This document shows, piece after piece, positions 494 to 61,960 of a stretch of 64,000 nucleotides of DNA. The position numbers and the translations under genes were made by a program. The notes beneath the pieces were generated by a model. The model ran no database searches, had not been told where the DNA came from, and saw only the letters and a list, made by a program, of their open reading frames with translations. Source of the stretch: Podarcis vaucheri (lineage: Eukaryota); NCBI GenBank assembly GCA_965113315.1, contig OZ220363.1, one strand, 5' to 3'. Within the stretch, counting starts at the first letter, position 1, and each line of letters begins with the position of its first letter.

Positions 494-700
494 TACAGAT
501 AGGTAGCCGTGTTGGTCTGCCATAGTCAAAATAAAAAAATTCCTTCCAGTAGCACCTTAAAGACCAACTAAGTTAGTTCTTGGTATGAGCTTTCGTGTGC
601 ATGTATCTGAAGAAGTGTGCATGCACACGAAAGCTCATACCAAGAACTAACTTAGTTGGTCTTTAAGGTGCTACTGGAAGGAATTTTTTTTATTTTGACT
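494..700. mobile_element. Palindromic non-autonomous Penelope-like element with hammerhead ribozyme core
   Basis: Inverted arms 524-603/620-700, 30-nt unpaired tail 494-523, 13-bp flanking direct repeat ACTTCTTATTAGT (481-493, 698-710). Confidence 0.8.
603..640 (+). ncRNA. Minimal type I hammerhead ribozyme motif
   Basis: GTAT-CTGAAGA-A-GTGTG(catg)CACAC-GAAA-GC-TC^ATAC; stem I GTAT/ATAC; predicted cleavage after C636. Confidence 0.75.
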
Positions 701-3384
701 TCTTATTAGTGTTTAGTTTTGCAATTCTAAAACATGAAACACAGGTAGCCCCTTTAAGCCACTGGCCACCAGTGGAGTGGAGTGGGGCCTGATCCAAGGT
801 AAGTCACAACAGGAGCACTTCCACCTTGCAAATATACGGTAAAAGATTGAGAAATAGACCCCCAAATGCATGTTTGGGTTAAAAGTGAGTCCTGGGTCTG
901 AAAAGGTTGAAGATGCCTCCTTTAAACCGAACAAAGAAACTGTCTTGTAATAAATTAGGGGAGGGGACAGGAAGTGTCCCTGCATGACAACTTTTCACTC
1001 TTTATAAATGAGCAGAGGAACAACTTTTCTCCCTCATTTTGTCTGCTCTTCATGCTATAGTAGGCAAGTCTTTAGTTCTGTAAAACTAATGAAAGTTTTC
1101 AGGTGTTTCATTCCTATTTTCCTCCACAGCTTTCCTGGGCTTTGTTTCAGGGCCTGGGGGAGGAAGAGTTGTGAATGTGATATGACTCACTTGACTCCTA
1201 CTCAACCAAATTCCTGTTCCAATTGGTTCTCACTTATGATTTCAGCTTGGCGCATGAGTTATGCGAGCTTAACTTCCCCTTCTTTCCCTGCTGTTTTTGT
1301 TTTGTGATAAAGGACACGGAGCAAATGAATGCTAGCTCTCTGCTGCTGGCTTCCTTGAACTAGCGAACTGGTAGAAAATCACCCTTATCCCCGAACTTCA
1401 TAAATATAGCTATAGAAAATAAAAAAGGCTGTCTGATCTTGTTCGACACAGTAATGTAGTCTCTGTAATGTTAATAGGTGGAGTCATTGTTTGGCAGGTG
1501 TAACTGGTTTCTGTTCTATTACTTCCTCTACATTTCTCTGCTTTCTGGAAATGTTCCTTTTGTTCCTGTCTCTGCTTGCTGACATAGCATTTTAAATAGC
1601 TTGATAACAGACTTGATGTTTCAGAAAGCAAGCTTAAATGACTGATCAATGGTTGAATGCACATATAAACTCAGATATGGAACAGATTTCTTTGCTTGAT
1701 GTCAGCTGCCTATATTTCATTTTCATGTGTAAGTTTTCAGGTAAAGTAGTCTAATAAATTCAGATAGTGCAACATGGTTCGATAAACTACAAACCAGTCT
1801 TTTAAATAGCCACTTGCTTGGTTGCCTGATAAGAATCACGTATAAGTAGCCAGACAAGGCACTGACGTCCACCTGTCTCGAGAGACAATGGAGGAGTGCG
1901 CCTTTTAGGGGCAAAGACCAACTGTTGGGAGGTTGCAGCACCTGATAAGAATCACCCATAGGTAGCCAGGCAAGGAAAATAACATACTTCCAGGCCACCA
2001 CTGAGCCACAAATGGTCAACATAAGTAAATGTGGGTTGGTGGGGTGCTAAAGTTAGCTAGTGACTGAATTATCTTATTTGCAAGTCTGAGATAAGCAGTC
2101 ATTTCAGAGGATCCAAGTGCCTAGAAATGTCACCTAGATAGGTCAGGAGCCATAGAGTTCTAGAACAGATGACAGAAGTCTGGAATATACACCACTGTAA
2201 AGTGGTGGCGGCGGGGGTGGGGTGGGAGAACTTGATAAAAGAATGGACTGAGAAGGCAAAGTCTGAGTGGATTCAGTAGGCAATGGCTGAGCAGTTTTAA
2301 GAGTTGGCCAATGGCCACCAAAGGGGATGGGGGGGGGAGAGAGAAATCCAAAGAACCTGAAACAGATTCTGCTGTAGCAGAAAACGTACGGAGTTAAAAA
2401 ATTTAGGGAATTGGGTACTCTTAAGAGTTCAGGGCTATTGCTGTATGAAACACTGAACTACTTTTAAGACAAGAGTGTGTAAACTTTTTTTTGCTTGATT
2501 ACGTCCAATCTTTCAGGGACCTCATGCCAGCAGTGGGTGGGGATGAAGCCAAATGTGGGTAGGACACATGCATTCCTTTCTCCGCCCTATCTCTCATTTC
2601 CCCATCCTTACCGCCTGCATGAAATTAGCCTGATAGGTTTGTGCAGGATTGAAAACCAGGCAGGTTGTTTGAACTGTGAATGTCCTGGCTATACCACAGA
2701 TTCTAGGATGAACTGTGTAGGAACAATAGTGCATGGGGGGATTTCAATTGAAGTGCGCATAACTTCTGGTTTGAGGGCTGTATTATTATTGCCTATCATA
2801 TTTGATGGTTTCTGCATTCAGCCATTTGGGGGGAAAATGAGTTTTCTAATGGATGTGTGCAGTGTTTAATTTTTTAAAAAGAGTTTTTAAAGTTGCCAAT
2901 ATTTGTTAATCCATCTTGAGTTGAGACGCCTTCTGTAAGTGGGGGCAAAGTAGCTGGTAGCACTTTGGCCTAATGAGCCAGTATATTATTTTCATTTATT
3001 TCCTTGATCTGAAACATGACCATACTTTTAGGATCCCTCTTGAGTACTCGGAATGCATACTGAGGAGTTCATTAAGTAGCACCCAATAGGTTGAGAGAGC
3101 TCAATGATCCTACAGATATGTGTAACTATAGTGCCATGGTTAATTGCTAAATGACATCTTGTTTGAAGGACATGTCTATTCTGCCACTGCTGCCTGTCAG
3201 TTACACTCTCATTGTAACAGCTACTGTATCACACATAAGGGACAGTGCCGACGCAGTTGGCTTGGACCACCTAGATTAATCCTTTGAAAGCCAGACAGTG
3301 AATGGATTTATAAACAAGTGTATATAGTGTTTTGCAAGTTAAATAATGTAATGCCTGGTATTTTTGTGTCTGTTTCCATGATAG

Positions 3385-19564: not shown

Positions 19565-22500
19565 GTGTAGATGTAGCTTTCACTTGCCAAAACAGTTGGC
19601 TAACTACTTTCTTCCTTTCTTCTGTAAAGCGCAAGAAGAGCGCAGTCACATACCTGAACAGCACAATGCATCCTGGGACACGTAAACGAGGTAGGTGTCT
19701 CATAATAGCACCTCCCTGTATGTTTATTTCCCTTTCTTTTGGACTGAAATAAAACAATATAGAAAATAGTTTTGTGGTACTGAATACACATAGTAGGTAT
19801 GCTGTAACCCTGGTAGGCAGCTACTCTACAGAAGCATCCTTTGTTGGTAGGCTTTGGGGGTAATCTGGAATGAATAAGGATATATATGGGAGAATTTCCT
19901 GTGTGTGAACTGCCCTGGGCCAGTAAAGATTCCCAACCCAGATTAGTAAATGTAACCCGTCATGCAGACTAGAAGGGGGGTGCCAAGGTGGTAACTGAGC
20001 TCCCATTCTGAGACTCTTCCTGGGTAGTGACTAAGTGCGTTTGGTCCTATGTTAGGACTCACTGTTTATGAAATTATTTCTTGTTCTGTTAAGAACATGT
20101 TCAGGTTTCTTTGAAAGGCGAGTTACTTGATATTTGATGAAATCGTGTGGCAACCGTGGTACTCTTAAAATTATTACAGGGATGCTTGCAAAATTCTTCC
20201 TACCCAATTTTCTCCTTAGATTTCAAGGTTCCGAATTCTTGATCTTGCTTATGGAATGGCACCAGTAATCTGCCATTTTTCCGTTTTTTTATTGTACAGA
20301 CTTTGTTTAGGCTGCTACACATGCAGTTCACTAGTTTTCCATTTGCATATTCCCCCCCACACACATTACAGGTTACTAATCCATGCCATACTAACGAAAA
20401 AGGCAGTAGTAACATGGCCATATCTATTCATGTGCCCTAGTGTGTATCTGTAAACTGTTAAGGGTTAGGAGTAATGTTGAAAATGGAAAACTGGCAAACT
20501 GCATATAAGCCAGTCCTGAGATGTATTTTAGAAATTGTCCATGTAAAACTGTAAGGCAGGTAAAGCAGAGCATGGGGCAGCCAATCCATGGAACAAGAAA
20601 AGAACTTGGGATATCTATTTTATCCCTTGATCTAAACTGTGCTGCTTCCACTGTGAACAATATATCTAGTATTAAAGGAAAGAGAGCCCAGTTGAAACTG
20701 AGATGGTGTGAACTTTGGAAGGTTTGCTCAGAAACACTTTTCCTTGAGGAGGGAAGGTTTCTGCATTCTCCCTGCATCTTGAACCTTTAAGTGTTGTTTG
20801 GTCTCCAACAAGCAAATGATGCACAGTTTTTGAAGTTTTGAGATGAAGCCCTCAGCTTCAGTAGGTTGTGACAGCTATCGACATGGTTGAGTTCAAGAGA
20901 GGTTAAGTTAATTCCTAATGCTTTGGGTGACCCTAAGATCACCAGAGAATGTATGTTGATGGCCAGGAATCAGAAAGGTACTACATCATCAATGCTTGTT
21001 GTTGCTAATACATCACCAAGCATGTCTGTTTTGTGTCTGAGACAAGTTACTACTGATCTGCTCTCGTGTGGTGGTTGCTGTGTTCTTAGAGCCAGCCAAT
21101 TGCACAGTAGAACTAAGCTTGGCTTTGAGATTAATTTATTTTGACTCTGTTCAGTGCTAAATATCATGGGTGAGCACTGAATGCCCTTTCTGTAATGCTT
21201 TCTAATGTTTCCTCTGCTCCTGGGCCTGTTGTTCAAAAACAAATGGCCAGGTCAGAGGACGTAAGTTGTATAATACTTGATATTTCAAATGTTAAAAGAT
21301 AAATGCACTATGTACCTAATAGGATGAGTGTGTTCATGCACATGAGTGTTTGGGTGAGTTATTAGGTAGCTCAGTAGAGTGCATTTGTCTCTTTCTGTTT
21401 AGCCCACTGATTTGAATTTGCTTAAAATGATAGTGCCTGATATTATTATTATATTTATTTATTTATTTATTTATTATTAGTCTTTGGCAGCTTTTGGCAT
21501 TTTGAAAATAAGGTGATTTTCTCATTGCAGTTTACATTGAGCAGGCTTTACTTTCTCCAAAAATTGCTGCCATAACTGCTCATTTCAGCTATTAGTGCAT
21601 TTCCCCAGGAGATCAGATGTTCAGAGGAGCCCTTCTTTCCTTGCATAATTTGTTTCTCACCTGAAGCAAAATTGGATGTACTGGGTTTTTTTGCACTGTG
21701 TCCCTCAACACACAGAGGGCATTGGCCTTCAGTGCCACTTTCCATCAGAGTTGTTAGGTGCCATTTACTGAAGATAATGATTACTATGCATGTTTAATTT
21801 GATCTTCCTGCCTCTTTTCTCAGTCTCTAGCTTCACTTATTGACTGCTTAAATATCTTTATTTATATATTCCTCTCTGAGCATATGCCTCTCTCATCAAT
21901 CATCAGAGTAGTGGTAATACAAAAGACAAAGATTGGTGTTTCCTACAGTGTTGTGATTTCACTTGGAATAATAGCACACTTTATCGTGAGTTATATCTTC
22001 CTACAATCAGCAGGATAGGATTTTATCTTAACTCTTCATACTTGCGGATTTGCTTTGTTGAGGCTTTCTCCCACTTAGGCTACCTTACAGCTCCTTTTGC
22101 TGAGAGAGATCTCATGGGGTTGCAGGCCATAATTTTCTCTGGCATTTGTGGAATGTTGTGAGTTTTTCTTAGCACAAAGGTGGTATTTAGATGTAGGTTT
22201 CACCTTAGGCTCACTGAGGGTGATTTACCAATGGTCATAACAATGTGATGGAGATACCATGATAAACTAGAGTGGTAGAAATCATGGCAGCTTTTCTTTG
22301 CCAGTGGAATTTGGGGCTGGTAAGTTAAAAGTTAAAGACATTAGTGTGGTTATATAGATATATTGGGAGTAGTGCTCTTTCTGAAGGCATGTGTTTTCTC
22401 TCTTGTGATACCATCCTTCCTTACACAATTCTCCTTTAAGTGTCTTAAAAATAACTTTACAGTCCTGACTTGGCTTTCTTTCACTCGTGACTATAATACT

Positions 22501-22950
22501 AACTTCTTCTCTGTACTACATCACTTCCTTTTTTTCATGCTAGCCAATGAGGAGCACTGGCCAAAGGTATGTAAGATTATTTCCCCTCCCCTTTTTGTTC
22601 CCTTTTGTTAATGTGTAGGTCGTCCACCTAAATACAACACGGTGCTGGGGTTTGGGGCTCTGACCCCCACATCCCCTCTGTCCAGTCATCCTGACTCCCC
22701 TGAAAATGAAAAGACAGAGACCACATTTTCTTTCCCCGCAACTGTTCATCCTGTGTCCCTGCCCAGCCCCAGCTCCACAGACGTAAGTAATTCTTCCTGA
22801 GAGGTTTGCTGTTCGAAGAGACCGTGGAGACTTCAGAATTTGGTTCTTTAGATGCACTGGTATTATGGTAAACTGCAATAATATGACCCCCTTCTTCAGC
22901 CCCCTACACTTCTACTTGTACCTATTCACCCCCCACCCAAACTCTGGAGT

Positions 22951-22983
<33 letters not shown>

Positions 22984-23238
22984 GCAGGTTTTGGTGTCTT
23001 CGGGTGTCTTCCCGTGTAAGAGTCGGGGTGTCTGTGCGACGTTTCGATGAGGTCTCACTCGTCATCTTCAGGCTGGTGCTTACGGCTTCTTGTTCCAGTA
23101 ACAAGAAGCCGTAAGCACCAGCCTGAAGATGACGAGTGAGACCTCGTCGAAACGTCGCACAGACACCCCGACTCTTACACGGGAAGACACCCGAAGACAC
23201 CAAAACCTGCATTCCTGTACCCGTGAAAATCTACGAAA

Positions 23239-23284
<46 letters not shown>

Positions 23285-26200
23285 TATCCACAGGACATGC
23301 CAGAATGTTCATATCCTAGAATTGTAGAGTTAGAAGGGGAAATATTTCAAAGTTCTAGAAGCCCTTCCCAGATGCACAGTGATGCAGTGAATTAAAGACA
23401 GTGCATATGTGATATATTTCAGCAATCTAGTGGCAGGAGGAGAACAGGTCCTGTCACACAATTACGTATTATTACTGAATCAATAAAGTAAGGAGAAATT
23501 CTTGCTCAAGATAGTTGGACACAGCGTTAGTGGAATCAGAGGGAGTGCCTTCACTGACACCTGGCAGTTGCTTCTCGTTTATGGATTCTGCATACCTATC
23601 TGGGGAAAAGTTTTCTTTTCTGTGAAAGTATCCTCCTGGTATGTGAGCCCAGTTGCCTATTCTGCCAGTTTAGCACAGGCTGAATTAAAGTTGATCTAAT
23701 CCATAGCTTGATCTGCATCACTGTCTGTTTTTGGAGAGTGTGAGTGGTAAATTTTTATTACTCAGAAGGAAGGTAAATCCATCCTTCTCATGATAGCTGG
23801 GTTGGAATTGGAAGTTCTGGACTCACAACCTTGGTGAAGTCTCATCACTTCTCTGTACCTTCGTTTCCTCATAATAAATAGCTCCATGGTTGTAAGACCC
23901 AACTAATGAACACATTTTACACACAATCAGACTTGCATAACTTTTATGTTCTAGTGGGCTGCACTAGATGTTCCTCCAATCTGTTTTTTATGCTGCTGAG
24001 CTAAGAGCCTCTGCATCTCATTCATGAAATATGCAGCTTGAGGATTGCTCTAACTTACATAACTGTATCTGTAGCCTCATTGTTGAAGCAGCCAAGAATA
24101 GCCAAATCAGGAACACCATCAGTATCTTTTCTGCACTGCTGGGTATTGCAAAAGATAAAATCAACAGGCAGCATTCCTATAGGATGCAAGTTCTGTGTTA
24201 AGAGCCATAGTCATTCATTCTCTAGGTATTGTATTATTCATGAAATCTCCCAAACTATCAGAAGGCAGTAGTAAAAATTGATCCAAACAAAGAGGACTTT
24301 CCTGCTGATTTAGCATGGTGTGCACACATGCACATGAACACATTCTACTTATAACAGGTTTGACAAAGGTTGCTAGACTCTTAAGCACATTAGCTTTATA
24401 AATAAAGCACTAGGACAGTGAGCTCATTGTCATTCCAGTTGATGTCTGTTGCACATTTTTACATAATGTTCTGAGCTTTCGGTAATGATGTAATTCTGAT
24501 TAGCCATCGGCCTTCAAGCCTAGAGTGTTTTGCTAAATATCCATCCACCAAACATGTACACACATCACATGAATGTATTGCTTCCTCCAGAAATTCACCT
24601 CCTATTTCACTTCAGTGGTGTGTGTTTTTTGGAGAATTTATGGTAAATAGGTTTGTTTTCAGTTGTGTCCCTCCACTCACCGAAGATTCTTTAATCCAAT
24701 ATAGGATTCCCTTAATGGAATGGGGGCAGGCATTGTTTGCTGATTTCCCCCCATCTCTCTGCAGTTCCTAGACCTTCCCTGGTCTGCTCCAAAGGATTGT
24801 GGAGGCTGATGGGGCAGGTGGCCCCAGAAGATAATGAAAACTGCTTCTCTTCCATTCATGGAAACCTCTGCTAGTGCAGAGTACTGCCCATTAATGGAGA
24901 GAAACAACTGAGTACAACCTTCTGATCTTGTTAGCTTCTGAATATCTTTAACTGCCATAATCAGTTATTCAGATTAAGATGCTCATTAGGTTTCAGCTCC
25001 ACTTCAACAAGTGCTCTAGGGCTAGGATGTGGGATCTGTGGCCTTCCAGATGTTGCTCTACTCAAACTTTCATTAGTCTTGGCTAGCACAGCCAGAGGTC
25101 GGGGGATTTTGTAAATTTGTTCAGCAGTATTTGGAGAGCTATATGCTCCCCATCCCTGTTCTAGGGAAACCTCATTGTGTTTGTCCTTCATGCAATCACA
25201 AAATACAAGAAAAAAGTAGGCCGTTTGAGTTTGGGTAGTCATAACGCTTCAAGAGATACATGAAAGTTTAACTCTGTTGAGTGGACAATATGAAACTGGC
25301 TGTATTATTATAGATTGAACTACCTTAGAACCCAACAATGCTCAAGTCACAGGGGATCCAACCCCCTTCTATTTTGTGAACTCATCTTAGCTACTACTAC
25401 TACAACACTGTAGAAAGCTACAGAGAGTGGTATGACTGACTTAAAAGCTGGGTGGGGGGTTGAGGGATAAAATGTGAGGTTTTCATTAAGTCCCCCCCCT
25501 TCCCCCCATAATTTGAACATTGGAATCCAGCACTCATTTGATATGTAGAACTTGCAAAATCAAAGCATCTTTACATGCCAAAGTCAGGATAGCACAGTAA
25601 ATTTAGGAATTAATAGAGAGAGGTTTCCATCAAAGTGTGAAGGCTTGGTTTTCAGTGTCAAAGTTTAAGCCTCAGCTAATGTTTGTGGGTAATATCCTCC
25701 CACCCGCCAGTGGTTGGTATTCTGGCATCATTTAATATGTATTCTTAATAAAGATGGGCACATTAGCATGCTATGTAAGGCAGTAGAAAACATCTGGCAT
25801 AATTCAAATCCTACCACTGCTCAGTTTGATATGGAAGATTGAATTACATATTTTAAGGAGGCTGTGACACTTTTATTTCTTTCAAATTTTATCCCTATAT
25901 TCTGAATTTGAAGAAAGCTTTAGAGATTGGGATTTGGATGTAGCAATTTTCCAGAGCAGCCCTCAGTTGATTGAAATTCATGTATTAAGCCATTTTCTGT
26001 TACCTTATTTCTGTTCTTTTTAGCTCTTCTTCTCTTTCTGCATTTCTGTACAGTAATCTACAAATAAAAATAGTAACTATGAGATGGTAACTGCAGAAGG
26101 AAAGAGAGAAAAGGAAACTAAATGGCTTTGCTAAGAATTTTGCATCCTAAAGTGAAGAGATAAGGAAGGGAAAGTAATGCAAAGAGTCATGCAAAACTGA

Positions 26201-31411: not shown

Positions 31412-31587
31412 NNNNNNNNNNNNNNNNNNNNNNNNNNNNNNNNNNNNNNNNNNNNNNNNNNNNNNNNNNNNNNNNNNNNNNNNNNNNNNNNNNNNNNNNN
31501 NNNNNNNNNNNNNNNNNNNNNNNNNNNNNNNNNNNNNNNNNNNNNNNNNNNNNNNNNNNNNNNNNNNNNNNNNNNNNNNNNNNNNNN
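31412..31587. other. Assembly gap (176 N)
   Basis: Run of N. Confidence 1.
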
Positions 31588-32425: not shown

Positions 32426-32577
32426 NNNNNNNNNNNNNNNNNNNNNNNNNNNNNNNNNNNNNNNNNNNNNNNNNNNNNNNNNNNNNNNNNNNNNNNNNNN
32501 NNNNNNNNNNNNNNNNNNNNNNNNNNNNNNNNNNNNNNNNNNNNNNNNNNNNNNNNNNNNNNNNNNNNNNNNNNNNN
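32426..32577. other. Assembly gap (152 N)
   Basis: Run of N. Confidence 1.
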
Positions 32578-40805: not shown

Positions 40806-52214
<11,409 letters not shown>

Positions 52215-60589: not shown

Positions 60590-61960
60590 GAGCGAAGACC
60601 TAACCTGCGCCGCCCACCTTCCGCCGCGGCTTGTGAGTGAGCGGGTCGCCAGAGCCGCGCGGGCGCGACGTGCCCTTCACGGGCCAGTAAACTGAGCTGC
60701 TGGGAAAGAGGAACAAGTGAGCTATCGGGGCAACGAATGTCGCTGCTGGGGCGGCTTCATGCTAGAGAGATTAAGGGAGTTTCAAGGGTCCTGGAAACCA
60801 GCTCAATAAAGAGCGCACTTTCACTGGATGCTGGGATGCGATGCGGGGCGGGGGGGGGGGCGAGTGTGTGGCTGCGGGTAGAATTCTGCACACCTCCGTA
60901 ACTGCGCAAGCACACCGCCCCCACCCCAAACAACCCCACCGCGGTGCCGTGCGCTCTGCGCCCCGGGGCAATGCCTTCCGCAACCCTGATTACGCGCGAG
61001 GTAACAAGCAAGGACGCAGCGCGATCTCTCGCCGACGGGGAAGCTGGTGGGAGGCGCCACCGGTGTTGCTTCACAGGGACCTCCGAGCCTCTGCATCTGG
61101 CCCGACGGTCCTCTCCCCTCCTCCACTTTCCTTCCCACCTGCTGCAGGCGCTCCCAGCAAGTCCAGGTGTCCTTACCTGGCTCTTGTCCTCCGTCCGCCG
61201 CCTCCCCCCGGCCCTGAGCTTTACGCGCAGCCCACAGACAGCAGCGCCCTTTTCTACGCTTCCTCTGCCCTCTTTTCCTTGCTTGCACACGCCTCCCTTT
61301 GGGATCAGTCACTTTCCTCTCCCCTCTTTTGTTAATTCCCGGAGCCGGGGCCTCCCCTCCCCTCCCCGGAAGGCGAAGAACAAAAGGAAAGCCCACAAAA
61401 GAAAAAGAAAAAAGGTTACATTAACTTTCTGCTCAGCCATCGCAAAGTCGCCCAGGGCAAAGGGGAAGCCGCCTGCTCCGCCTCCCCTCGCCCCCCCCCC
61501 TACCTTGACTCAGCCGAGCTGCCCCTTCCTCCCCTCCGGTAAGTTGAGGCAAGAAAAAACTCGCATCGCCACCGGAGGGCTCGAGAAAAGCGCCGCCACT
61601 GCTAGAAGTGCCAAAAATAAAGTAAACACAGAGGGTCACCGCTGCCCACGTGAGAAGCGGCGCGGCGTCCCGGGAGCTCCGAGAAAAGAGCCTGGGCTGG
61701 GAGGAGGAGGAGGAGGAGGCGAGCGAAAGTGGCGGCAATTAACTCCGCAGGCGCCGGGACTGACCCCAACTCAGGACGCCTGGCAGCAGCAGCAGGGTCG
61801 AACCCGGATGTGGGAATCCTGCTGCTTGCGGGGGGAGGGGTGGGAAGCCCCCGGGACCTGAATCCGACAGTCAGCCGAGCCTGACCTGAGAACCCAACTC
61901 TCGGGTTAGTTCGTCCTATAAAGAATTAACACGGCGGGTCCCTGCCCTCGAATGACATGC
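60590..61960. promoter_or_regulatory. CpG island, likely LARGE2 promoter / non-coding first exon(s)
   Basis: High GC and CpG density against a CpG-depleted background; minus-strand donors CAG|gtaagg (exon end 61177) and AAG|gtaggg (61504). Confidence 0.75.

What the first reader, a model, noticed from the sequence alone, without database searches (positions are those of the whole stretch)
22982..23240. 113-bp near-perfect palindrome carrying a hammerhead core on both strands, inserted in (TA)n
Seen: arms 22982-23094 and 23100-23212 match except for one CpG-type change (T23048), with a 5-nt loop and a 28-nt tail on the right arm only. The + strand reads CTGAAGA-T-GACGAG(tgagac)CTCGTC-GAAA-C-GTC (core 23123-23156, GUC triplet, palindromic ACGT stem III). 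The - strand carries the mirror copy with one stem II mismatch. The high retained CpG content indicates a recent insertion. Its sequence is unrelated to the 494-700 element outside the ribozyme core, so it is a second family with the same design. Stem I is only 2 bp here, so activity is uncertain.
Basis: partly seen in the sequence, partly recalled or inferred. Interest (0 to 1): 0.82.

Follow-up and report, generated by a model that had tools for sequence, protein, structure and literature searches.

The report
Fold-back Penelope-like retroelement stub with hammerhead
The palindrome is real, but it is an ordinary dead stub of a Penelope-like (Poseidon-type) retrotransposon in a lizard intron: two inverted 5'-truncated copies of the element's end, each carrying the element's usual minimal hammerhead ribozyme, inserted into a (TA)n tract.

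Summary
Arms 22982-23094 and 23100-23212 are 113 nt with one CpG-type mismatch (T23048). There is a 5-nt loop and a 28-nt one-sided tail (23213-23240). A complete minimal hammerhead lies at 23123-23156, and the insert has undecayed CpG and sits inside (TA)n.

It is not a new hairpin-ribozyme design. Every feature matches the published anatomy of Penelope-like element (PLE) insertions:
- a strongly 5'-truncated copy;
- an adjacent inverted 5'-truncated copy;
- a roughly 30-nt tail at one end only;
- an AT-rich or microsatellite target;
- a min-HHR at the pLTR-ORF junction.

The layout also matches the Anolis Poseidon element PAc. The ORF start codon is A9-U-G10.1 of the ribozyme, and the cut site is 25 nt after it. 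The two outer ends fall at +84 and +112 of the ORF; the PAc tail spans about +85 to +119, between its two reverse-transcription start sites.

The 37 codons kept are open. They are 68% identical to the N-terminus of a database protein that I aligned by eye to the Poseidon_Ac ORF.

This copy has no promoter or RT. Its ribozyme would be locked in a -242 kcal/mol hairpin.

First-stage notes list many such palindromes in this genome. Read-level checks could not be run. Verdict: a new member of a known kind, of low interest.

The parts
22951..22983 (.). Left half of the target microsatellite: (GT)n followed by (TA)n
   Evidence: Read. The (TA)9 tract 22965-22982 is one of only two (TA)>=8 tracts in the window.
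22982..23094 (-). Left arm. It is an inverted, 5'-truncated copy of the PLE pLTR-ORF junction, sense on the - strand, covering -29 to +84 relative to the ORF AUG. It has no tail. The outermost AT is ambiguous with the (TA)n target.
   Evidence: Inverted repeat I1. One mismatch at 23048. tblastn of P0002 residues 1-30 maps to 23065-22976.
23038..23071 (-). Mirror min-hammerhead motif on the - strand, with a C10.3.A11.3 mismatch in stem II caused by T23048
   Evidence: Mirror coordinates of 23123-23156 in the repeat. It failed the perfect-stem descriptor, as expected with one mismatch.
23095..23099 (.). 5-nt centre (CCAGT) where the two 5'-truncated copies meet
23100..23212 (+). Right arm. It is a direct 5'-truncated copy, sense on the + strand: 29 nt of pLTR 3' end plus ORF nt 1-84.
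23123..23156 (+). Minimal type-I hammerhead. It has CUGAAGA, an unpaired U, a 6-bp stem II (G10.1-C11.1) with a 6-nt loop, GAAA, palindromic C15.2-G16.2, U16.1 and C17. The predicted cut is after 23156.
   Evidence: Descriptor hit, with 0 hits in 200 simulations. The features match the published PLE min-HHR.
23129..23239 (+). First 37 codons of the PLE ORF, open. The AUG is A9-U-G10.1 of the ribozyme.
   Evidence: Translation. It shares 25/37 identities with residues 1-37 of P0002, with the first 10 residues identical.
23213..23240 (+). One-sided 28-nt 'tail', ORF nt 85-112. This is the segment between the two reverse-transcription start sites.
   Evidence: Present only on the right arm. The PAc tail spans about nt 85-119, and PAc RT starts at 111-118.
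23240..23281 (.). Right half of the target (TA)n microsatellite
   Evidence: Read. The (TA)19 tract lies at 23242-23279.

Best explanation
This is a young, non-functional insertion of a Poseidon/Penelope-clade Penelope-like retrotransposon (PLE). It consists only of the last ~141 nt of the transposition unit (29 nt of pseudo-LTR plus ORF nt 1-112) and an inverted second copy of the same piece (to ORF nt 84), joined head-to-head.

Inferred mechanism, by analogy with the Anolis element PAc:
1. The PLE RT/GIY-YIG protein cut an AT-rich target, here a (TA)n tract.
2. Both DNA strands primed reverse transcription at internal start sites of the element RNA, one at about +84 and the other at about +112. 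This gives the one-sided 28-nt tail.
3. Synthesis stopped or switched template about 29-34 nt upstream of the start codon, giving the equal arms and the 5-nt centre.

The hammerhead is the element's own min-HHR, which straddles the pLTR-ORF junction. It appears on both strands only because that junction was duplicated in inverted orientation.

The sequence shows the anatomy, the ribozyme motif, the ORF homology, the target and the youth of the insert. Two-strand priming, the use of two start sites and the cause of the equal truncation are inferred. In this copy the ribozyme is a passenger: the copy has no promoter or RT, and in any read-through transcript the motif is buried in a 113-bp duplex.
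For: (1) Anatomy. The insert is an inverted 5'-truncated copy next to a direct 5'-truncated copy, with a tail at one end only, in a microsatellite. Craig et al. 2021 describe exactly this for PLEs, including the 30-40-bp one-sided tail, hammerheads in pLTRs and (TA)n targets.

(2) Ribozyme. All core nucleotides are present. [quoted passage not shown] A 2-bp helix I is documented for D. virilis Penelope.

(3) Layout compared with PAc (Frangieh et al. 2024):
- In PAc the ORF starts at the start of stem II. Here the AUG is 23129-23131, which is A9-U-G10.1.
- In PAc the cut site is 26 nt after the start codon. Here it is 25 nt.
- The PAc tail spans about nt 85-119. Here it spans nt 85-112.
- PAc RT starts at 111-118. 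Here the insert ends at 112.
- PAc cuts and extends both strands and prefers AT-rich DNA.
The Poseidon_Ac consensus in that paper's supplement reads ...CTGAGG|ATG...GAAACGTC. That is the same architecture with a different, still paired stem II.

(4) ORF. The 37 codons are open. They are 68% identical to residues 1-37 of P0002 (E 6e-4 against 1.8 billion proteins; pairwise E 2e-13). P0002 residues 33-143 align without gaps, by eye, to Poseidon_Ac_1p residues 34-144. That is 26/49 identities over residues 33-81, with motifs such as LYGE, FQ.TR, EKL, LC..FL..CRD..IP, KTP and LL.LH.

(5) The element at 494-704 in the same window has the same anatomy (fold-back, 32-nt one-sided tail, 13-bp target duplication) with unrelated sequence.

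(6) Youth. CpG observed/expected is 1.05 against 0.27 in the window, and the arms differ at 1 of 113 positions.
Against: No full-length parent with RT and GIY-YIG could be fetched.

The link from P0002 to Poseidon_Ac rests on my by-eye alignment with a sequence read in a paper supplement. It has no reference in the tools, so no computed alignment was made. P0002 has no Pfam hit and no other relatives in the word search.

No Rfam hammerhead model matches, even at E<=10. The tail is 28 nt, just under the quoted 30-40. The predicted AC-rich stem-loop is not more stable than shuffles (z -1.14). Only one locus was examined, and no family alignment was possible.
Confidence: 0.88

Rival explanations
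1. It is an independent non-autonomous mobile family whose functional unit is the hairpin itself: a palindromic ribozyme SINE or retrozyme-like element that propagates as a fold-back RNA or DNA.
For: First-stage notes list many hammerhead palindromes of different sizes in this genome (unverified). A 2026 preprint argues that animal retrozymes are non-autonomous PLE derivatives.
Against: The arms contain the start codon and an open 37-codon N-terminus of a PLE-type ORF. The outer ends fall on the homologues of the PAc RT start sites. The asymmetric tail and variable arm lengths are what 5' truncation of PLE copies predicts. Retrozymes are direct tandem repeats, not inverted ones. A hairpin of -242 kcal/mol would block the ribozyme fold.
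Confidence: 0.06
2. It is an assembly artefact: a fold-back created by chimeric or hairpin reads or by misassembly in a (TA)n tract.
For: Craig et al. note that such structures cause assembly problems. I could not lay reads. Only runs X1 and X2 of one sample, possibly the assembly's own source, hold ~0.96 of the sampled words. All other runs hold 0.70-0.76.
Against: The palindrome is short and bounded by unique, non-inverted flanks on both sides. The arms differ by one CpG transition and by a 28-nt tail that maps to a biologically meaningful site. An artefact would not produce either. A second, unrelated insert in the window has the same anatomy.
Confidence: 0.03
3. It is a DNA-transposon MITE with long terminal inverted repeats that inserted at a TA dinucleotide (Tc1/mariner or Stowaway-like).
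For: It has long inverted arms and lies in a TA context.
Against: The whole element is the repeat, with no internal region. One end has a 28-nt extension, so the termini are not symmetric. The arms carry a PLE-type hammerhead and ORF start. No transposase-family signal was found.
Confidence: 0.02

Closest known systems
Poseidon_Ac / PAc, the Penelope-like element of Anolis carolinensis (Arkhipova 2006; Frangieh et al. 2024, PMC11167929)
   Same: The hammerhead straddles the pLTR-ORF junction with the AUG formed by A9-U-G10.1. The GAAACGUC box and the cut site lie about 25-26 nt after the start codon. Insert ends fall at about +85 and about +112-119, which defines the tail. The target is AT-rich. 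Both strands are used. The ORF N-terminus is homologous through P0002.
   Different: This is a different family. Stem II is GACGAG/CUCGUC against GCCUGC/GUGGGC, and loop II is 6 nt against 7. As a result the GAAACGUC box is read in another frame (SKRR against ETS). The N-terminal peptide differs apart from the ...E(N/S)LR(K/Q) end. Only 141 + 113 nt are present here, with no RT or EN.
Complex tandem/inverted PLE insertions with a one-sided tail (Evgen'ev & Arkhipova 2005; Craig et al. 2021, PMC8557442)
   Same: A 5'-truncated copy lies beside an inverted 5'-truncated copy. The tail is at one end only. The insert is in a (TA)n microsatellite. The hammerhead is in the pLTR.
   Different: The truncation is extreme, so the insertion is nothing but the fold-back. 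The tail is 28 nt rather than 30-40. (TA)n preference was explicitly reported for Naiads, which lack canonical hammerheads; for Poseidon the published preference is AT-rich/ATT.
Minimal hammerhead (min-HHR) of metazoan PLEs (Cervera & De la Pena 2014, PMC4209133)
   Same: It is type I with the full conserved core. It has an unpaired nucleotide between A9 and G10.1, a G10.1-C11.1 pair, a 6-bp helix II, and no real helix III but a palindromic 15.2/16.2, which implies action as a dimer.
   Different: Helix I is 2 bp, against 4-5 bp in the general consensus and 2 bp in D. virilis Penelope. Self-cleavage is untested. Published min-HHRs cleave poorly in vitro, and the PAc ribozyme needs the element's protein.
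Non-LTR retrozymes of animals (tandem hammerhead repeats giving circRNAs)
   Same: They carry type-I hammerheads with weak helix III, and they are derived from PLE pLTRs according to a 2026 preprint.
   Different: Retrozymes are direct head-to-tail repeats. This is a single inverted pair, so each transcript strand holds only one sense ribozyme and cannot form the cis dimer.

Membership tests
Penelope-like element insertion (Penelope/Poseidon clade) | Sequence derives from a PLE (homology to PLE ORF or pLTR) | tested here: met
   The 37-codon ORF piece shares 25/37 identities with the N-terminus of P0002. P0002 aligns ungapped with the Poseidon_Ac_1p N-terminal domain, by eye only.
Penelope-like element insertion (Penelope/Poseidon clade) | Parent element encodes RT plus a C-terminal GIY-YIG endonuclease | not testable with these tools
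Penelope-like element insertion (Penelope/Poseidon clade) | Inverted 5'-truncated copy adjacent to a direct copy | tested here: met
   113-nt arms, 5 nt apart. The structure is described in Craig et al. 2021.
Penelope-like element insertion (Penelope/Poseidon clade) | A ~30-40-nt tail at one end only, lying between two internal RT start sites | tested here: met
   The 28-nt tail at 23213-23240 is ORF nt 85-112. In PAc it is about 85-119.
Penelope-like element insertion (Penelope/Poseidon clade) | AT-rich or microsatellite target | tested here: met
   The insert splits the only long (TA)n tract of the 64-kb window.
PLE minimal hammerhead (min-HHR) | Core CUGANGA...GAAA...UH, extra nucleotide between 9 and 10.1, G10.1-C11.1, palindromic 15.2/16.2 | tested here: met
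   Descriptor hit at 23123-23156, with 0 hits in 200 simulated windows.
PLE minimal hammerhead (min-HHR) | Helix I of 4-5 bp | tested here: not met
   Only 2 bp: C23122-G23157 and G23121-C23158. The D. virilis Penelope variant also has 2 bp.
PLE minimal hammerhead (min-HHR) | Self-cleavage (as a dimer, or assisted by protein) | not testable with these tools
   This needs an in vitro assay. In the full transcript the motif lies inside a -242.5 kcal/mol hairpin.
Rfam hammerhead families (types I, II, III, HH9, HH10) | Covariance-model score at or above the gathering threshold | tested here: not met
   There was no hammerhead hit at gathering score, nor at E<=10 on 421 nt or 86 nt. Only miRNA-hairpin models scored, below threshold, because of the perfect hairpin.
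Animal non-LTR retrozyme | Direct tandem repeats, each with a hammerhead | tested here: not met
   No direct repeats were found. The two copies are inverted.

The most novel reading that the evidence does not exclude
The two outer ends of the fold-back use the two alternative internal RT start sites, about +84 on one arm and about +112 on the other, while both arms stop at the same 5' point. If this holds across the many palindromic copies noted in this genome, each one is an in vivo fossil of a dimeric PLE RNP. In that model the two protomers nick opposite strands, start at different sites and finish by a coupled template switch. That would be direct genomic support for the two-strand priming so far seen only in vitro for PAc.
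Probability: 0.3. Interest if true: 0.4.

Novelty: new member of a known kind. Interest (0 to 1): 0.15.

Why it matters
It matters little on its own. This is one dead copy of a retrotransposon class whose hammerheads, fold-back insertions, tails and AT-rich targets are all published.

It is useful as a clean example. The two ends land on the homologues of the two reverse-transcription start sites mapped biochemically in the Anolis element. The ribozyme also doubles as the start of the ORF in a second, diverged Poseidon-type family, with a fully compensated stem II.

A genome-wide census of such fold-backs could test the two-strand priming model in vivo. The insert also places a 113-bp perfect duplex in a PHF21A intron, about 200 nt after an alternative exon. 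That could matter for RNA editing, small RNAs or splicing, but nothing here shows it does.

Tried and rejected
- **Rfam.** There was no hammerhead hit in three scans. The sub-threshold miRNA hits (MIR6288 and others) are generic responses to a perfect hairpin and were rejected.
- **Read laying.** So there is no read-level test of the palindrome, of presence/absence or of RNA ends. Only local scripts scanned the whole window file.
- **The look-up of encoding contigs.** It was closed, so the DNA of P0002's contig could not be read.
- **Pattern scans.** The hammerhead/ORF-start pattern gave 0 hits in metagenome and viral contigs.
- **The search for related loci with P0002.** The four hits were a chance DLYGEETF match in an 82-aa acidic marine protein and were rejected.
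- **P0002 searches.** The search for homologous proteins found only P0002 itself. Pfam, the ESM Atlas and the PDB gave nothing.
- **P0001.** This was the top hit of the representative search. It is a 1164-aa protein with a 15-fold internal repeat matching query residues 6-24, and I rejected it as a low-complexity match.
- **Pfam on window ORFs.** A scan of the 10 longest safe ORFs found no RT or GIY-YIG.
- I made no computed alignment of the window ORF or of P0002 with the Poseidon_Ac consensus. That sequence was read in a paper supplement and has no reference, so I compared it only by eye.
- **AC-rich stem-loop.** It is predicted at 23178-23225 but is not significant (z -1.14).
- **Word shares of runs.** They were 0.96 in one sample and 0.70-0.76 elsewhere. 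These are too indirect to call a presence/absence polymorphism.

Full report
**Observation**

The repeat finder reports arms 22982-23094 and 23100-23212: 113 nt, 99% complementary, 5 nt apart. A script shows a single difference, T23048 where the other arm implies C, which is a CG>TG change. The loop is CCAGT, and a 28-nt extension (23213-23240) is present on the right only.

The insert sits between the only two (TA)>=8 tracts of the 64-kb window, 22965-22982 and 23242-23279. CpG observed/expected is 1.05 in the 259 nt against 0.27 for the window. The insert is therefore much younger than its surroundings.

The window's two N runs (31412-31587 and 32426-32577) are far away.

**The ribozyme motif**

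The + strand at 23123-23156 reads CUGAAGA, an unpaired U, a 6-bp stem II (GACGAG/CUCGUC) with a 6-nt loop, GAAA, CG and UC.

I wrote a descriptor for the minimal hammerhead: the core boxes, 0-1 extra nucleotide after A9, G10.1-C11.1, a perfect stem II of 4-9 bp, a palindromic 15.2-16.2, and U-H. It hits only this site and 607-636 in the window. It hit nothing in 200 simulated 64-kb sequences.

The mirror copy on the - strand (23071-23038) has a C.A mismatch in stem II, caused by T23048. Stem I is 2 bp.

No Rfam hammerhead model matches at the gathering score or at E<=10, even when only 86 nt are searched. The sub-threshold miRNA hits only reflect the perfect hairpin.

**What it is**

Three papers together describe this object.

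*Cervera & De la Pena 2014.* They defined the min-HHR of metazoan Penelope-like elements (PLEs). It is type I and has no real helix III, so it is expected to act as a dimer. [quoted passage not shown] The D. virilis Penelope variant has a helix I of only 2 bp. They also noted pairs of motifs close together on opposite strands, and most motifs as single truncated copies. All these traits are present here.

*Craig et al. 2021.* They describe PLE insertions as highly 5'-truncated. There is often an inverted 5'-truncated copy immediately adjacent, which forms inverted repeats. A 30-40-bp tail is often present at one end only. Hammerheads lie in the pseudo-LTRs, and there is an insertion bias for microsatellites, with (TA)n named for Naiads.

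*Frangieh et al. 2024.* They characterised the Anolis carolinensis Poseidon element PAc.
- The cut site is 26 nt after the start codon.
- The protein prefers AT-rich DNA.
- It cleaves and extends both strands.
- Reverse transcription starts internally at two sites. The main one is 111-118 nt into the ORF, and the roughly 34-nt tail (about nt 85-119) lies between the two.

**Point-by-point match with PAc**

| Feature | PAc | This insert |
|---|---|---|
| Start codon | at the start of stem II | 23129-23131, which is A9-U-G10.1 |
| Cut site | 26 nt after the start codon | C17 at 23156, 25 nt after the ATG |
| Tail | about nt 85-119 | nt 85-112 (23213-23240) |
| End of the insert | main RT start at 111-118 | nt 112 |

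- The palindrome arms end at ORF nt 84 (23212).
- Each outer end shares 1-2 nt of ambiguity with the TA repeat.
- The Poseidon_Ac consensus printed in that paper's supplement closes on itself as ...CTGAGG|ATG...GAAACGTC. That is the same architecture, with a different but still fully paired stem II and a loop one nucleotide longer.

**Coding evidence**

The frame from the ATG stays open through all 37 codons that were retained.

A search of 1.8 billion representative proteins found P0002, a 189-aa protein from a 2989-bp Logan contig. Its residues 1-37 match the query end to end: 25/37 identical, library E 6e-4, pairwise E 2e-13. tblastn places the same match on both arms and nowhere else in the window.

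The first 10 residues, which are encoded by the ribozyme, are identical. The next 27 are 56% identical. This fits extra constraint on the ribozyme part, but it is an inference, because P0002's DNA could not be read.

By eye, P0002 residues 33-143 align without gaps to Poseidon_Ac_1p residues 34-144. There are 26/49 identities over residues 33-81, and shared motifs include LYGE, FQ.TR, EKL, CRD..IP, KTP and LL.LH. This region is the N-terminal helical domain of the PLE protein.

I could not compute this alignment. The Poseidon_Ac sequence has no reference in the tools, so that step is left out.

The other hit, P0001, is a repeat-driven artefact.

**How it most likely arose**

The sequence shows the following directly:
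- two copies of the same 3'-terminal piece of the transposition unit lie head-to-head;
- their outer ends fall at the two positions homologous to the PAc RT start sites;
- the insert is in an AT-only target.

The following steps are inferred:
1. A PLE RNP cut the (TA)n tract.
2. Each DNA strand primed cDNA synthesis on element RNA, one at about +84 and the other at about +112.
3. The two products were joined about 29-34 nt upstream of the AUG.

The equal arm length suggests a coupled template switch or snap-back rather than two independent truncations. One locus cannot decide between these.

**State of this copy**

The copy has no promoter, RT or EN, so it was dead on arrival.

A transcript through it folds into a 113-bp duplex of -242.5 kcal/mol. 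Each strand carries only one sense ribozyme, so the cis dimer that min-HHRs need cannot form. The arm alone does fold stem II. The AC-rich stem-loop around the first start site is predicted but is not significant.

**Context and comparison**

According to a first-stage note the locus is a PHF21A intron in a reptile. The insert lies about 200 nt downstream of an exon noted at 22544-22782.

The other hammerhead hairpin in the window (494-704) has the same anatomy. It is a fold-back with a 32-nt tail, on the left arm only. A 16-nt centre carries the 5' half of the ribozyme, so only the + strand has a complete motif. It has a 13-bp target duplication. It shares no sequence similarity with this element, and its A9-A-G10.1 gives no start codon. 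It is therefore a different PLE lineage or a non-coding derivative.

The scan's own notes list 13 hammerhead palindromes and 63 Penelope notes in this genome, several of them inside (TA)n. These notes are unverified leads, but they agree with this reading. I had already stated this reading before seeing them.

**Limits**

I worked beside those places afterwards.
- Pattern scans of metagenome and viral collections found nothing, and the protein-based locus search gave only a chance match.
- The run index shows 0.96 and 0.95 of sampled words in two runs of one sample and 0.70-0.76 in all other runs, including another sample with the same organism label. This is compatible with an insert that is absent or unassembled elsewhere, but it is too indirect to claim.
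- An assembly artefact is unlikely, because the flanks are unique and non-inverted, the tail is asymmetric, and the arms differ at one CpG. It is not formally excluded.

**Verdict**

The interpretation as a novel palindromic ribozyme design is not supported. This is a textbook fold-back, 5'-truncated insertion of a Poseidon-type Penelope-like element from a family not identical to Poseidon_Ac. I classify it as a new member of a known kind, of low interest. One modest point is worth a genome-wide census: the two ends use the two alternative RT start sites.

Noticed in passing
window 494-704: A second fold-back hammerhead insert. It has a 32-nt one-sided tail at the left (494-525) and arms of about 80 nt. 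A 16-nt centre holds CUGAAGA, so only the + strand has a complete min-HHR (607-636). It has a 13-bp target-site duplication (481-493 and 705-717). Its sequence is unrelated to the 22982-23240 insert, and it has no AUG in the ribozyme. It has the same PLE-type anatomy.
   Followed up: partly
window 40967-41695 (- strand): A 242-aa ORF matches Pfam Glyco_transf_49 (glycosyltransferase for dystroglycan), E 3.4e-10. It is probably an exon of a LARGE-type gene next to PHF21A. The gene assignment is from memory and was not tested.
   Followed up: no
window 60757-61861: A cluster of long overlapping ORFs lies in several frames on both strands, with no Pfam hits for the two tested. It looks like a GC-rich, stop-poor stretch such as a CpG island or first exon.
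   Followed up: no
They lie in or next to the exon noted at 22544-22782. I did not send them to any search tool afterwards.
   Followed up: no
window 22300-23900 (run index): Two runs of one sample hold about 0.96 of the sampled words. All other runs hold 0.70-0.76; they carry seven organism labels, and one is another sample with the same label as the best holder. This may hint that the insert or its family is lineage- or individual-specific.
   Followed up: no
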